From Auanema rhodensis (Eukaryota > Animalia > Nematoda), in NCBI GenBank assembly GCA_964057225.1, contig OZ059894.1, positions 9,114,001-9,178,000 on the forward strand: DNA of 64,000 nt. Direction: 5' to 3'. The notes under the pieces are model-generated. The model saw only the letters and a program-made list of their open reading frames with translations, searched no databases and was not told where the DNA came from. A program made the position numbers and the translations under genes. This document shows, one piece after another, positions 11,109-50,300 of the stretch. Within the stretch, counting starts at the first letter, position 1. The number at the start of each line of letters is the position of its first letter.

Positions 11109-11525
11109 TCTGTCAAAAATCAACTACGTTTATGACATTTAAGAAAGCTCTAGTGATAATTACATCCCTTTGCAAATAATATTATGGGTACTAAACTTGT
11201 TCGCAACTAAATACTGATACAATAACACAAGACCAGTATTCTATCACAGCCGTTTCAGTTTTCAACCTGTATTGAGCACAAATCCTAATACAAACCTAAA
11301 AGAAATCAAGACAATGAAATAAAAATTTGGTAATATAATTCCCTGACGATACCAGATTTCTCAAATAAGCAGACTAACATGTAATTGCATTCCATTACAT
11401 GAACATGAAGATGAAGAGTATTATTCAGATTCGAGGATTCCAGAGTTTGAACATTGGAATTGATTTCAACTGTGGTTTTCTGTTCCTTATAACTCTTCAA
11501 GAATTCTTCATTCTGTCTACTCATA

Positions 11526-11598
11526 GCCTCGATAGCTCAGTTGGGAGAGCGTTAGACTGAAGATCTAAAGGTCACCAGTTCGATCCTGGTTCGGGGCA
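11526..11598 (+). tRNA. tRNA-Phe(GAA), first copy of the array (representative of the + strand copies)
   Basis: GCCTCGATAGCTCAGTTGGGAGAGCGTTAGACTGAAGATCTAAAGGTCACCAGTTCGATCCTGGTTCGGGGCA. It folds into a full cloverleaf: acceptor GCCTCGA/TCGGGGC, D GCTC/GAGC, anticodon TTAGA-CTGAAGA-TCTAA, T ACCAG-TTCGATC-CTGGT. No intron. Confidence 0.99.
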
Positions 11599-11601
11599 AT
11601 G

Positions 11602-11605
11602 TTTT
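11602..11605 (+). terminator. Pol III T4 terminator after the tRNA (present in each unit)
   Basis: TTTT 3 nt after the discriminator base. A second TTTT follows about 25 nt later. Confidence 0.7.
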
Positions 11606-11652
11606 ACCTTCCGACACCTTGCAATATTCCTTTTCTGATTTCTATCGGTCAT

Positions 11653-11675
11653 CTGAATCCTAGCTTAGGTTTCAG
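11653..11675. other. 23-bp imperfect palindrome in the spacer of each full unit
   Basis: CTGAA-T-CCTA-GCT-TAGG-T-TTCAG, with arms CTGAA/TTCAG and CCTA/TAGG. Confidence 0.85.
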
Positions 11676-45649: not shown

Positions 45650-46979
45650 TTTTTTTTCTTTCTTTTTTTTTTTTTCTTTTGTTTCTAACCTTAAAATAAA
45701 TGTCCAAAGGCCGCAAAAGTACAAAGGGGACGACATGAATAAAGTTTTTTTTAAAGATTCTAGAGCAGTAAGAAAACAAAATTAGAGAAAAGTGCAAGAG
45801 CGGATAAAAATAGTTTTTGAGAAGAGATAAACATCATTAACTATAATAAGCTTACGGTAGATAGGCGGAGTCAGATTGGTGGCCACGATTTGAAAAACTC
45901 CCTCTCATTTACCCTCCGCATCGCCCAGCAAAGCATGACTATCCTATTGCTCCCGAATCTTTCTCTCTCCCAACACACATCTAAAAGAATCTTACGCACC
46001 TTACGTCAACATCCCACACGTAGCTCACCATTCTCGGTTTTTCCAAACCAAGAGTCCTATAAAGGTGGCCAAAAGATTCTCATCGGTTTTCCGAGCCCTT
46101 TACCCGTCCGATACCAACAGTGACGCTACTGTCGCAAGTCGTCGCAGAAGCCGTACCCGACTTCTTAGTGTTCAAATAGAAAAACCGCACCAACCAGCCG
46201 AGAAGCCGAAGCCGCAAGTCGACCAGTTTTATACTCCCCGAGAAGGAACATATTCACCTTCTGACGACACCTACGAAGATCCGGACTTCATCAAAGCCGA
46301 CGACAGAAAAAATTTTTATATACATTCTTTTCTTTTCTGTAAATTGTAAAACGAAAGTAACGGTGAATTAGAAAACTTTTTGATGAGAGATTAAGTGAGT
46401 GAACAACTAAAAATAAGGAATAAGCAAAAATATAATAGAAATAAATGGCTACCGTAATCCTATACGACCGATAGAGATAAAATTTTGCGCTAAACTGAGC
46501 TCCATATGTATCTCCAAGAAGAGACGAACATTGGCAGGCGCCTAAGCCACACCCCATCTGAGTGGTAGCCTCCATTAGTACTCAAGGATTCATTCAGAGA
46601 GACACATGAAGACGAAAACAATTAATAACTAAAAATCTTTATCCCCATCATCATTAGGATACGAGTAACCATGCACGCAAAAAGTTGAATAATTCCTTAT
46701 TATCTCACATAAATCTCAAATTCATGGAACAATTTTTTTTATTACAGTACTACAATGACTAAATTTATTTTTCTAATCCTCCGTTACAAAATAACATAAA
46801 ACCCATTATTGTATTCAAATTCTATCTTAATACTATAAAGAAACCTATTAATACCATTTAAATATTTTTCTACATGTAGATTTTAAAACTTTTAATTTTA
46901 ATTGTAAACTCCTAGACTCTGAAACTCAGCTACATATACACTAAAAACTCTTTATATCGCGCGGACGCGAAAAATCTTT

Positions 46980-46988
46980 GAAAAAGGG
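46980..46988 (+). promoter_or_regulatory. Polypurine tract
   Basis: GAAAAAGGG, 2 nt before the 3' LTR. Confidence 0.7.
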
Positions 46989-46990
46989 CA

Positions 46991-47335
46991 CGTTCCATTC
47001 GGACTCCCCATATATGTAGCTGAAGGGTTAGAGTCAGACGACCAGAAGACCGAGGAATGGCTCCGCCTTCCCTCGTTCCCTTGGTCGGGAGTTCGCCTCT
47101 TAGCAAGCTCATGGACGGCTTGTAGTTTAGTCTTTATACTTATATTTATCTTATTGTATTGTATCTTTATCTTTGTATATTATTGTTGTAGTTTCATGCC
47201 AATAAATCTTTCTCTCTTTTATCTTATGATTGACCTTATGCTCTTTATTCCTTACCGCTACACCAAGGAATACTATGCGCGTCATAGTATAAACTACAAT
47301 GGTTTATATTATCGACGCAGGAGCATAACGGAACG
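46991..47335 (+). repeat. 3' LTR (345 bp)
   Basis: Direct repeat of 43778-44122. Confidence 0.95.
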
Positions 47336-50300
47336 ATTACTGAAACCTAAGCTAGGATTCAGATGACCGATAGAACTCAGAAAAGGAATATTGGAAGGTG
47401 TCGGAAGGTAAAACATTGCCCCGAACCAGGATCGAACTGGTGACCTTTAGATCTTCAGTCTAACGCTCTCCCAACTGAGCTATCGAGGCTATGAGTAGAC
47501 AGAATAAAGATTTCTTGAAGAGTTATCAGGAACAAAAAACCACAGTTCAAATCAATTCCAATGTTCAAACTCTGGAATCCTCGAATCTGAATAATACTCA
47601 TTACTGAAACCTAAGCTAGGATTCAGATGACCGATAGAACTCAGAAAAGGAATATTGGAAGGTGTCGGAAGGTAAAACATTGCCCCGAACCAGGATCGAA
47701 CTGGTGACCTTTAGATCTTCAGTCTAACGCTCTCCCAACTGAGCTATCGAGGCTATGAGTAGACAGAATAAAGATTTCTTGAAGAGTTATCAGGAACAAA
47801 AAACCACAGTTCAAATCAATTCCAATGTTCAAACTCTGGAATCCTCGAATCTGAATAATACTCATTACTGAAACCTAAGCTAGGATTCAGATGACCGATA
47901 GAACTCAGAAAAGGAATATTGGAAGGTGTCGGAAGGTAAAACATTGCCCCGAACCAGGATCGAACTGGTGACCTTTAGATCTTCAGTCTAACGCTCTCCC
48001 AACTGAGCTATCGAGGCTATGAGTAGACAGAATAAAGAATTCTTGAAGAGTTATAAGGAACAAAAAACCACTGTTCAAATCAATTCCAATGTTCAAACTC
48101 TGGAATCCTGGAATCTGAATAATACTCATTACTGAAACCTAAGCTAGGATTCAGATGACCGATAGAACTCAGAAAAGGAATAATTCAAGGTGTCGGAAGG
48201 TAAAACATTGCCCCGAACCAGGATCGAACTGGTGACCTTTAGATCTTCAGTCTAACGCTCTCCCAACTGAGCTATCGAGGCTATGAGTAGACAGAATAAA
48301 GAATTCTTGAAGAGTTATCAAGAACAGAAAACCACAGTTGAAATCAATTCGAGTGTTCAAACTCTGGAATCCTCGAATCTGAATAATACTCATTACTGAA
48401 ACCGAAACTAGGATTCAGATGACCGATAGAACTCAGAAAAAGAATATTTCAAGGTGTCGGAATGTAAAACATTGCCCCGAACCAGGATCGAACTGGTGAC
48501 CTTTAGATCTTCAGTCTAACGCTCTCCCAACTGAGCTATCGAGGCTATGAGTAGACAGAATAAAGAATTCTTGAAGAGTTATCAAGAACAGAAAACCACA
48601 GTTGAAATCAATTCGAGTGTTCAAACTCTGGAATCCTTGAATCTGAATAATACTCATTACTGAAACCGAAACTAGGATTCAGATGACCGATAGAACTCAG
48701 AAAAAGAATATTTCAAGGTGTCGGAAGGTAAAACATTGCCCCGAACCAGGATCGAACTGGTGACCTTTAGATCTTCAGTCTAACGCTCTCCCAACTGAGC
48801 TATCGAGGCTATGAGTAGACAGAATAAAGAATTCTTGAAGAGTTATCAGGAACAGAAAACCACAGTTGAAATCAATTCGAGTGTTCAAACTCTGGAATCC
48901 TCGAATCTGAATAATACTCATTACTGAAACCGAAACTAGGATTCAGATGACCGATAGAACTCAGAAAAAGAATATTTCAAGGTGTCGGAATGTAAAACAT
49001 TGCCCCGAACCAGGATCGAACTGGTGACCTTTAGATCTTCAGTCTAACGCTCTCCCAACTGAGCTATCGAGGCTATGAATAGACAGAATAAAGAATTCTT
49101 GAAGAGTTATCAAAAACAGAAAACCACAGTTGAAATCAATTCGAGTGTTCAAACTCTGGAATCCTCGAATCTGAATAATACTCATTACTGAAACCGAAAC
49201 TAGGATTCAGATGACCGATAGAACTCAGAAAAAGAATATTTCAAGGTGTCGGAATGTAAAACATTGCCCCGAACCAGGATCGAACTGGTGACCTTTAGAT
49301 CTTCAGTCTAACGCTCTCCCAACTGAGCTATCGAGGCTATGAGTAGACAGAATAAAGATTTCTTGAAGAGTTATCAAGAACAGAAAACCACAGTTGAAAT
49401 CAATTCGAGTGTTCAAACTCTGGAATCCTTGAATCTGAATAATACTCATTACTGAAACCGAAACTAGGATTCAGATGACCGATAGAACTCAGAAAAAGAA
49501 TATTTCAAGGTGTCGGAAGGTAAAACATTGCCCCGAACCAGGATCGAACTGGTGACCTTTAGATCTTCAGTCTAACGCTCTCCCAACTGAGCTATCGAGG
49601 CTATGAGTAGACAGAATAAAGAATTCTTGAAGAGTTATCAGGAACAGAAAACCACAGTTGAAATCAATTCCAATGTTCAAACTCTGGAATCCTGGAATCT
49701 GAATAATACTCATTACTGAAACCTAAGCTAGGATTCAGATGACCGATAGAACTCAGAAAAGGAATAATTCAAGGTGTCGGAAGGTAAAACATTGCCCCGA
49801 ACCAGGATCGAACTGGTGACCTTTAGATCTTCAGTCTAACGCTCTCCCAACTGAGCTATCGAGGCTATGAGTAGACAGAATAAAGAATTCTTGAAGAGTT
49901 ATCAGGAACAAAAAACCACAGTTCAAATCAATTCCAATGTTCAAACTCTGGAATCCTCGAATCTGAATAATACTCATTACTGAAACCTAAGCTAGGATTC
50001 AGATGACCGATAGAACTCAGAAAAGGAATATTGGAAGGTGTCGGAAGGTAAAACATTGCCCCGAACCAGGATCGAACTGGTGACCTTTAGATCTTCAGTC
50101 TAACGCTCTCCCAACTGAGCTATCGAGGCTATGAGTAGACAGAATAAAGATTTCTTGAAGAGTTATCAGGAACAAAAAACCACAGTTCAAATCAATTCCA
50201 ATGTTCAAACTCTGGAATCCTCGAATCTGAATAATACTCATTACTGAAACCTAAGCTAGGATTCAGATGACCGATAGAACTCAGAAAAGGAATATTGGAA

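What the first reader, a model, noticed from the sequence alone, without database searches (positions are those of the whole stretch)
11416..47340. Four independent rearrangements break in the same 9-bp motif of the unit (TAATGAGTA, ~110 bp upstream of the tRNA)
Seen: (1) the array's left edge starts at TAAT|GAGTA (11416); (2) the 75-bp deletion rejoins at TAATGA|GTA (23486); (3) the + arm ends at TAATGAGTA| at the inversion (37859); (4) the LTR target duplication is the TAAT of this motif (ATTA on +, 43774-43777). Half of the eight distinct breakpoints I can see fall in 9 bp of a 264-bp unit, right next to the spacer palindrome. Inference: a site-specific nick or break point, or an exposed site positioned by the Pol III complex, drives array birth, remodelling and element targeting. 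This would be an undescribed system.
Basis: partly seen in the sequence, partly recalled or inferred. Interest (0 to 1): 0.8.

Follow-up and report, generated by a model that had tools for sequence, protein, structure and literature searches.

The report
Breakpoint cluster in tRNA-Phe array spacer
In a nematode's giant tandem array of phenylalanine tRNA genes, four of the eight visible rearrangement breakpoints do fall within 10 bp of each other, at the foot of a small hairpin-forming, AT-rich stretch in the spacer; with so few events this points to a fragile or accessible spot of a kind already reported for satellite DNA, not to a new site-specific cutting system.

Summary
A phase map of the 264-bp tRNA-Phe(GAA) array (185 genes) finds five events with eight breakpoints. 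These are the left edge, one 75-bp deletion now present in three copies, one inversion, one 25-bp duplication and one LTR insertion. Four breakpoints lie between unit bonds 260|261 and 5|6.

Against a uniform null, P is about 0.01 (0.002 for the tightest arc). It rises to 0.04-0.11 if the edge is set aside. The pattern was found post hoc.

- The breaks hit four or five different bonds and join with 0-1 bp of microhomology.
- No small repair scars exist at about 185 other copies of the motif.
- TAAT|GAGTA is itself the head-to-tail unit junction, so it cannot have pre-existed array birth.
- The TSD tetranucleotide occurs only twice in the unit, both times here.

The cluster coincides with three features. 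It is the least stable duplex segment of the unit, the 3' foot of a 33-nt quasi-palindrome (z -3.65), and the least variable 25 bp of the spacer.

Junctions clustering in conserved boxes or palindromes are already described for satellite DNAs, including in nematodes. My best reading is a passive structural hotspot (about 0.45), then coincidence (about 0.33). A dedicated nicking system is about 0.05.

The parts
2740..11011 (+). Flanking spliced HEATR5B-like gene; it ends about 400 bp before the array
   Evidence: Pfam PF20210 and PF25468 on single exons. tblastn with nematode HEATR5B proteins covers residues 1 to 2028 of 2061. The closest protein is from Auanema sp. JU1783.
11416..37859 (+). 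+ arm of the tRNA-Phe(GAA) array: 264-bp units, 101 tRNA genes
   Evidence: TRF, ARAGORN, phase map.
11407..11424 (+). Left edge of the array: unrelated flank, then unit position 1 (bond 264|1)
   Evidence: The first unit has only 2 mismatches to the consensus.
23479..23492 (+). 75-bp deletion junction (unit 191 joined to 3). It starts just after the T4 terminator and ends 2 nt past TAAT.
30532..30545 (+). Second copy of the same deletion junction
31249..31262 (+). Third copy of the same deletion junction
   Evidence: 4 mismatches to copy 2 over 1400 bp.
37851..37872 (.). Inversion junction: the + arm ends with TAATGAGTA (bond 5|6) and the - arm starts at unit 81, with 1 bp of microhomology
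   Evidence: The arms are not mirror images, so this is not a perfect fold-back.
37860..43777 (-). - arm, proximal part
42278..42328 (-). 25-bp tandem duplication inside one tRNA gene (unit 127-151); a breakpoint pair outside the cluster
43774..43777 (.). Left copy of the target-site duplication ATTA (TAAT, unit 261-264)
43778..47335 (+). Non-autonomous LTR retrotransposon, 3558 bp, with no gag/pol remnants
   Evidence: LTRs are 100% identical. No Pfam hits on any ORF and no Rfam hits.
43778..44122 (+). 5' LTR (345 bp; termini CG..CG, 6-bp terminal inverted repeat)
44123..44135 (+). Primer-binding-site-like sequence starting with TGG, directly after the 5' LTR
   Evidence: The resemblance to the tRNA-Gln 3' end is from memory only.
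46980..46988 (+). Polypurine tract just before the 3' LTR
46991..47335 (+). 3' LTR
47336..47339 (.). Right copy of the target-site duplication ATTA
47336..64000 (-). - arm, distal part; it runs off the window and contains a 9-unit higher-order repeat
20889..20921 (+). Example copy of the 33-nt quasi-palindrome (unit 234..2), whose 3' half contains TAATGA. It is present in every full unit.
   Evidence: ssDNA hairpin of -5.7 kcal/mol, z -3.65, matched by 0 of 200 shuffles.

Best explanation
The window holds a lineage-specific tandem array of tRNA-Phe genes in a rhabditid nematode. The array evolves by unequal exchange, as its higher-order repeats show.

TAAT|GAGTA is the head-to-tail seam of the 264-bp unit. 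It lies 106-114 bp upstream of one tRNA and 78-86 bp downstream of the previous one. The seam sits in the AT-richest, thermodynamically weakest and least variable stretch of the spacer. It also forms the 3' foot of a 33-nt imperfect palindrome.

I read the cluster as a passive, structure-based hotspot. DNA that melts, bends or forms a hairpin easily is hit more often by generic processes. These would be fork stalling or breakage followed by end joining for the deletion and inversion, and integrase attack on bendable TAAT-type DNA for the LTR.

The signal is inflated by two things. The edge defines the seam, and the integrase probably had only two candidate tetranucleotides in the unit.

Shown: the positions, junction anatomy, stability ranking, hairpin and invariance. 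Inferred: that these features caused the breaks.
For: - Cluster P is about 0.01 against a uniform null.
- Segment 264..9 ranks 1-10 of 264 for lowest duplex stability at windows of 10-30 bp. The second weakest segment (68-87) holds the other inversion breakpoint, 81|82.
- The quasi-palindrome at unit 234..2 folds with z -3.65 to -4.7 on either strand. The deletion ends exactly at its foot (2|3), the edge and one integrase cut fall in its bottom stem (264|1), the other cut is at its bulge (260|261), and the inversion is 3 nt outside.
- 253..13 is the least variable 25-bp window of the spacer (P 0.02-0.06).
- Junctions have 0-1 bp of microhomology.
- The same pattern is published for satellite DNAs: junctions in conserved motifs in Meloidogyne (PMC3694981), and junctions within a palindrome for one of the mollusc satellites studied (PMC5139131).
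Against: - There are only eight breakpoints, and the pattern was picked post hoc.
- The four non-cluster breakpoints as a set are not biased to weak DNA (P 0.24-0.42).
- No break falls at the 5' foot of the hairpin.
- A 13-bp interrupted stem is short for extrusion in duplex DNA.
- 33 units of the - arm carry a stem-breaking A252C with no compensating change, so the hairpin is not visibly maintained.
- The spacer as a whole does not fold better than shuffles (z -1.47).
- No chromatin, read-level or population data were available.
Confidence: 0.45

Rival explanations
1. Coincidence. The five events are unrelated and uniformly placed, and four breakpoints happen to fall close together. The impression is helped by post hoc selection, by the edge defining the reference point, and by TAAT/ATTA being rare in the unit.
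For: - P is only about 0.01, and 0.04-0.11 once the edge is dropped.
- TAAT/ATTA occurs only at unit 261 and unit 5.
- The breaks are at different bonds.
- There are no scars at about 185 other motif copies.
- Variant linkage across the motif is like that across the tRNA.
Against: The cluster also coincides with three independent sequence features: weakest duplex, hairpin foot and lowest variability. Each would be roughly a 5% coincidence on its own.
Confidence: 0.33
2. Chromatin or Pol III positioning. TFIIIB/TFIIIC on each gene, and at most one nucleosome per 191-bp spacer, leave a fixed exposed patch near the middle of the spacer. That patch is preferentially broken and is used by the integrase.
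For: - The motif lies 14 bp from the spacer midpoint.
- A TATA-like TTATAA sits at -39..-34. If TFIIIB covered about 45 bp upstream of the gene, an assumption not tested here, about 146 bp of spacer would be left free.
- Ty1-type elements integrate into positioned nucleosomes upstream of tRNA genes (PMC5911963).
Against: - Accessibility would give a broad distribution of tens of bp, not 10 bp.
- One insertion cannot show targeting.
- The precisely targeting Ty3/gypsy elements insert 1-33 bp upstream, not 111-114.
- Whether the array is transcribed is unknown.
- Nothing here measures chromatin.
Confidence: 0.12
3. A dedicated site-specific nick or break system acts at TAATGAGTA and drives array remodelling and element capture. 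Candidates would be a fork-barrier protein as in rDNA, a transposase-derived binding protein, or a rolling-circle type nickase.
For: - Four breakpoints lie within 10 bp.
- The surrounding 25 bp are nearly invariant, as a protein-binding site might be.
- A TAAT-N4-ATTA inverted repeat is flanked by direct TTCAG repeats.
- A cut-and-paste role for a conserved box has been proposed for nematode satellites (PMC3694981).
Against: - The breaks are at four or five different bonds.
- There are no repair scars in about 185 other motif copies.
- No nuclease, recombinase or transposase gene is in the window, and the LTR element is non-coding.
- The motif did not exist before the array.
- Helitron-type ends (5' TC, 3' CTRR, A|T target) are absent.
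- There is no exclusive recombination hotspot.
Confidence: 0.05
4. Assembly artefact. The inversion junction, and possibly other junctions, are mis-joins in a long-read assembly of a near-identical repeat, so fewer real events exist.
For: A 52-kb array with 95-99% identical units is hard to assemble, and only one junction supports the inversion.
Against: - The two arms carry different variant sets and higher-order repeats.
- The junction is not a perfect palindrome, as a fold-back chimeric read would give.
- The deletion is embedded in a consistent 3-unit block seen three times.
- The LTR has a clean target duplication.
Confidence: 0.05

Closest known systems
Non-random junctions of satellite DNA monomers in conserved boxes or palindromes (Meloidogyne satDNAs, PMC3694981; mollusc satDNAs, PMC5139131; Nasonia PSR junctions and alpha-satellite, as cited in those papers)
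   Same: Array ends, internal rearrangements and insertions map to one short, low-variability segment of the monomer, next to or inside a palindrome. The transitions are abrupt. The mechanism is unknown, with illegitimate recombination or a transposition-like cut proposed.
   Different: Here the repeat unit is a functional-looking tRNA gene with its flanks, not a non-coding satellite. Only one locus and eight breakpoints were seen. No CENP-B-box-like motif is present. One of the four hits is an LTR integration.
Tandem tRNA gene arrays (Entamoeba arrays, PMC2652664; Arabidopsis tRNA clusters, PMC10701932)
   Same: Head-to-tail units each carry tRNA genes. They are homogenised, vary in copy number, and show higher-order repeats from unequal exchange.
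   Different: This array has a single tRNA per 264-bp unit, at least 185 copies, two inverted arms, and no microsatellite-like spacers.
Retrotransposons targeted to Pol III genes (Ty1, Ty3, DGLT-A, TRE5/TRE3; review PMC5911963)
   Same: An LTR element sits upstream of a tRNA gene, in a spacer that is a 'safe' site.
   Different: The position (-111 to -114) is outside the 1-33 bp windows of Ty3/gypsy-type targeters and only fits the broad Ty1 window. There is a single insertion, the element is non-autonomous, and any site in this array is near a tRNA. Membership is untested.
rDNA replication fork barrier (Fob1/RFB) as a programmed break site driving array copy-number change; tRNA genes as polar fork pause sites (reviews PMC5368702, PMC6672053)
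   Different: There is no evidence here for a barrier protein, polarity or breaks. Known tRNA pausing maps to the transcribed gene, not to a site about 80-110 bp away.
Short inverted repeats and quasi-palindromes as deletion or inversion endpoints (established knowledge; not tested with a paper here)
   Same: A deletion ends at the foot of a hairpin-capable sequence and an inversion junction lies 3 nt away.
   Different: The stem is only 13 bp with a mismatch and a bulge, and no break occurs at the other foot.

Membership tests
Tandem tRNA gene array | Head-to-tail repeats, each with an intact tRNA gene and a Pol III terminator | tested here: met
   185 tRNA-Phe(GAA) genes at 264-bp spacing. 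Rfam tRNA 68.6 bits. TTTT lies 4 nt after the gene.
Tandem tRNA gene array | Homogenisation and higher-order repeats from unequal exchange | tested here: met
   1-5% divergence between units. A 9-unit higher-order repeat is present, and a 3-unit block carries the deletion three times.
LTR retrotransposon | Two direct LTRs, a target-site duplication, a PBS after the 5' LTR and a PPT before the 3' LTR | tested here: met
   345-bp LTRs are 100% identical. ATTA is duplicated. TGG... follows at 44123 and GAAAAAGGG lies at 46980.
LTR retrotransposon | gag/pol coding capacity and TG..CA LTR termini | tested here: not met
   The internal region has no ORF over 120 aa and no Pfam hits. The termini are CG..CG. 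It is therefore a non-autonomous, atypical member.
Pol III-targeted retrotransposon (Ty3, DGLT-A or Ty1-like) | Many independent copies at a fixed distance from Pol III genes | not testable with these tools
   Only one copy is in the window. No other copy could be retrieved.
Pol III-targeted retrotransposon (Ty3, DGLT-A or Ty1-like) | Insertion within the known narrow windows (1-33 bp upstream, or 40-54 bp for TRE5) | tested here: not met
   The insertion is 111-114 bp upstream and 78-81 bp downstream of tRNA genes, compared with the table in PMC5911963.
Site-specific nick or break system (RFB-like, nickase, homing-type) | Cleavage at one defined bond | tested here: not met
   The bonds are 260|261, 264|1 (twice), 2|3 (or 1|2) and 5|6 (or 4|5).
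Site-specific nick or break system (RFB-like, nickase, homing-type) | An associated enzyme or binding protein | tested here: inconclusive
   None is encoded in the window. A trans-acting factor elsewhere cannot be excluded.
Site-specific nick or break system (RFB-like, nickase, homing-type) | A physical break or fork-stall signal at the site | not testable with these tools
   Needs END-seq, TrAEL-seq or 2D gels.
Junction-prone conserved box or palindrome of tandem repeats (satDNA type) | Junctions non-randomly placed in the monomer | tested here: met
   4 of 8 within 10 bond positions, P about 0.011 under a uniform null. Weak because n = 8 and the choice was post hoc.
Junction-prone conserved box or palindrome of tandem repeats (satDNA type) | The junction segment is a low-variability box and/or a palindrome | tested here: met
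   253..13 has 1 variable position in 25 (P 0.02-0.06). The quasi-palindrome 234..2 has z -3.65.
Junction-prone conserved box or palindrome of tandem repeats (satDNA type) | Recurrence at many arrays or loci | not testable with these tools
   No other copy of the unit was found. The metagenome scan gave only chance 20-23 nt hits. Orthologous loci lack the array.
Helitron or rolling-circle element end | 5' TC, 3' hairpin plus CTRR, insertion between A and T | tested here: not met
   The unit starts with GAGTA and ends with GTAAT, and the flank ends in GAA.

The most novel reading that the evidence does not exclude
The invariant stretch of about 25 bp around TAATGAGTA, with its hairpin, is a protein-bound programmed pause or break site. 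It would be a tRNA-array counterpart of the rDNA fork barrier, setting where the array is cut, expanded, inverted and colonised by retroelements.
Probability: 0.06. Interest if true: 0.8.

Novelty: new member of a known kind. Interest (0 to 1): 0.35.

Why it matters
If the hotspot is real, this array would be a tractable case for an old question: why junctions of tandem repeats tend to fall at particular conserved or palindromic spots in the monomer. It is tractable because each unit carries a defined Pol III gene, so positions can be related to a known protein-DNA complex. It would also bear on how very large tRNA arrays are remodelled. If it is chance, the locus is an ordinary, recently homogenised tRNA array carrying one young non-autonomous LTR insertion.

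Tried and rejected
- Finding more copies of the unit. A metagenome scan with a 19-mer from the spacer gave seven loci with only 20-23 nt matches, about the chance expectation.
- Exact-product look-ups. Window ORFs from a HEATR5B exon, the array unit and the LTR interior were not on record.
- Word search with a single exon found nothing, as the length rule predicts.
- Literature search for the tRNA sequence string found nothing. A search for tRNA-Phe tandem arrays returned nothing relevant.
- Orthologous loci were obtained via the representative search and HEATR5B proteins. L008 and L009 (Logan) and L012 (Auanema sp. JU1783) have no tRNA within 10 kb downstream. L010 and L011 also have none, but they are short contigs. 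So the ancestral state of the seam could not be reconstructed.
- Mirror symmetry of the two arms, expected from a fold-back origin or artefact, was not found.
- Helitron-type termini were not found.
- A CENP-B-box-like pattern was not seen in the unit, by eye only.
- Recombination hotspot test. Mutual information and D' across the motif versus across the tRNA gave no clear difference.
- Folding the whole spacer gave no significant structure (z -1.47).
- Coding or RNA content of the LTR element: none found.
- The HEATR5B exons were searched one by one, by reference.
- The contig is nematode, not human.

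
Full report
**What is in the window**

Bases 2740-11011 (+) encode a spliced HEATR5B-like gene. Single exons hit Pfam PF20210 and PF25468. tblastn with nematode HEATR5B proteins covers residues 1 to 2028 of 2061.

The best matches are all nematodes. The closest is Auanema sp. JU1783, at 58.6% identity over the tblastn HSPs. Strongylids are near 50% and Caenorhabditis 42-47%. The host is therefore a rhabditid nematode and the contig is not human. 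Exons were searched one at a time by reference, and I did not build a joined protein model.

From 11416 to the end of the window runs a tandem array of tRNA-Phe(GAA) genes. There are 185 genes in 264-bp units. The + arm is 11416-37859 and the - arm runs from 37860 onward. The - arm is interrupted at 43778-47335 by a 3558-bp element.

**The array is lineage-specific here**

Orthologous HEATR5B loci were retrieved from two Logan assemblies (L008, L009) and from Auanema sp. JU1783 (L012). None has a tRNA gene within 10 kb downstream. The array, or its founder gene, is therefore lineage-specific at this position.

**Checking the observation**

I built a consensus unit and mapped every 12-mer of the window to it. 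Numbering: unit position 1 is the G of GAGTA at 11416, TAAT is 261-264, and the tRNA is 111-183.

The phase changes at exactly seven places, which reduce to five events.

| Event | Window position | Unit bonds |
|---|---|---|
| Left edge | 11416 | 264\|1 |
| 75-bp deletion (three copies) | 23486, 30539, 31256 | 191\|192 and 2\|3 |
| Inversion | 37859 | 5\|6 (+ arm) and 81\|82 (- arm) |
| 25-bp tandem duplication in a tRNA gene | 42278-42328 | 126\|127 and 151\|152 |
| LTR insertion | 43778-47335 | 260\|261 and 264\|1 |

- The three deletion copies are identical from -354 to +188 around the junction, so this is a single event spread by unequal exchange.
- The deletion removes 192..264 plus 1..2, with 1 bp of microhomology.
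- The inversion also has 1 bp of microhomology.
- The insertion adds 3562 bp, which is the element plus a 4-bp ATTA duplication. This matches the phase shift of 130.

Two small corrections apply. The deletion junction is present three times. The target duplication could be ATT (3 bp), because one A is shared with the LTR.

**Is it more than chance?**

All values come from simulation.

| Null model | Test | P |
|---|---|---|
| Uniform, 8 points | at least 4 within 10 bond positions | 0.011 |
| Uniform, 8 points | at least 4 within 6 bond positions | 0.002 |
| Weighted by local AT content | at least 4 within 10 bond positions | 0.013-0.03 |
| Edge set aside, 7 points | at least 3 within 6-10 positions | 0.04-0.11 |

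The pattern was noticed after looking, so these values are optimistic.

Two dependencies weaken the word 'independent':
- TAAT|GAGTA is simply the head-to-tail seam of the repeat. The flank to the left reads ...GATGAA, not ...GTAAT. The nine-base motif was therefore made by the array and cannot have been the site whose cutting gave birth to it.
- The tetranucleotide TAAT/ATTA occurs only twice in the whole unit, at 261 and at 5. An integrase with a taste for that sequence had nowhere else to go.

**What the LTR element is**

- The two 345-bp LTRs are 100% identical.
- A TGG-initiated primer-binding-site-like sequence follows the 5' LTR directly. Its resemblance to the 3' end of tRNA-Gln rests on memory only.
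- A polypurine tract precedes the 3' LTR.
- No internal ORF exceeds about 120 aa. None hits Pfam, and nothing hits Rfam.

It is a young, non-autonomous LTR retrotransposon with unusual CG..CG termini. It lies 111-114 bp upstream of one tRNA gene and 78-81 bp downstream of the next. Known precise Pol III targeters insert 1-33 bp upstream (Ty3, Tj1, DGLT-A) or 40-54 bp upstream (TRE5). Only the broad Ty1 window would fit (PMC5911963). One insertion in an array where every base is close to a tRNA gene says nothing about targeting.

**What is special about the site**

1. Duplex stability. By nearest-neighbour stability, segment 264..9 is the weakest of the unit at every window from 10 to 30 bp. 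The second weakest segment (68-87) contains the other inversion breakpoint.
2. Quasi-palindrome. Unit 234..2 is a 33-nt quasi-palindrome with stems of 4, 5 and 4 bp, one T·T mismatch, a TA bulge and a GCT loop.
   - As single-stranded DNA it folds at -5.7 kcal/mol with z -3.65. No shuffle out of 200 does as well, and the other strand behaves likewise.
   - The deletion ends at its 3' foot. The edge and one integrase cut lie in its bottom stem, the other cut lies at the bulge, and the inversion is 3 nt outside.
3. Low variability. 253..13 is the least variable 25-bp window of the spacer. It has one substitution among about 187 units, against a spacer mean of 5.4 non-consensus bases per position. 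P is 0.02-0.06 by shuffling.

Some tests did not support a hotspot:
- The four breakpoints outside the cluster are not biased to weak DNA (P 0.24-0.42).
- No break lies at the 5' foot of the hairpin.
- 33 units carry a stem-breaking A252C without compensation.
- The whole spacer does not fold unusually well.

**Tests of a dedicated break site**

- The cuts are at four or five different bonds.
- The junctions look like end joining.
- The roughly 185 other motif copies show no small indels.
- Variant linkage across the motif is about the same as across the tRNA gene. Mutual information is 1.76 versus 1.67 bits in the + arm and 2.41 versus 2.42 in the - arm. D' values are noisy at many short intervals.
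- No nuclease, recombinase or transposase is encoded in the window.
- Helitron-type ends are absent.
- The inversion is not a perfect palindrome, and the arms carry different variants and higher-order repeats. A simple fold-back read chimera is therefore unlikely, but only raw reads can confirm the junction.

**Comparison with what is known**

Tandem tRNA arrays are known from Entamoeba (PMC2652664) and Arabidopsis (PMC10701932).

The specific idea, that rearrangement junctions of a tandem repeat concentrate in one short conserved or palindromic part of the monomer, has been described for satellite DNAs:
- In molluscs, one of the satellites studied had junctions mapping non-randomly within a palindrome, while others were scattered (PMC5139131).

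The present locus fits that pattern and extends it to a tRNA gene array. It is not an undescribed kind of system.

**Verdict**

| Reading | Probability |
|---|---|
| Passive structural hotspot at the AT-rich, hairpin-foot, invariant seam of the unit | about 0.45 |
| Coincidence | about 0.33 |
| Exposure positioned by Pol III or chromatin | about 0.12 |
| Dedicated nick or break system | about 0.05 |
| Assembly artefact affecting part of the evidence | about 0.05 |

Only a larger set of independent junctions, or direct break and occupancy mapping, can decide among these.

Noticed in passing
window 55869-60893 (- arm): Nine units carry three linked substitutions in the tRNA (C61A in the T stem, G68C and G69T in the acceptor 3' strand) with no compensating change. 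They are probably crippled tRNA-Phe copies spread as part of a higher-order repeat.
   Followed up: partly
window 42278-42328: A 25-bp tandem duplication of tRNA positions 17-41 destroys one tRNA gene. ARAGORN skips this unit.
   Followed up: yes
window 47336-55255: A 9-unit higher-order repeat (variant order A B C D E F G H I) occurs about three times in the - arm. The LTR sits inside a run of identical 'A' units and has not itself been copied.
   Followed up: partly
every unit, e.g. window 20910-20934: TAAT-GAGT-ATTA is an inverted repeat flanked by direct TTCAG repeats. An outer 8-bp perfect inverted repeat, ATCTGAAT/ATTCAGAT (unit 236-243 and 8-15), brackets the motif, so two alternative hairpins are possible.
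   Followed up: partly
window 11416-11679: The first unit at the array edge is not decayed (2 mismatches to the consensus). Satellite array ends often are decayed. This suggests a young edge or ongoing homogenisation up to the edge (PMC5139131).
   Followed up: no
L008, L009, L012 (orthologous HEATR5B loci): Related nematodes have no tRNA gene or tandem array within 10 kb downstream of HEATR5B, so the array is lineage-specific at this locus.
   Followed up: yes
window 43778-43783 and 47330-47335: The LTR termini are CG..CG with a 6-bp terminal inverted repeat CGTTCC/GGAACG, instead of the usual TG..CA.
   Followed up: no
every unit, e.g. window 20126-20272: The ATG inside TAATGAGTA opens a 48-codon ORF that reads into the tRNA gene. 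It is almost certainly meaningless and is not on record in the protein collection.
   Followed up: partly
unit positions 72-77, e.g. window 11487-11492: A TATA-like TTATAA sits 34-39 bp upstream of each tRNA gene. The second inversion breakpoint (81|82) lies just downstream of it.
   Followed up: no
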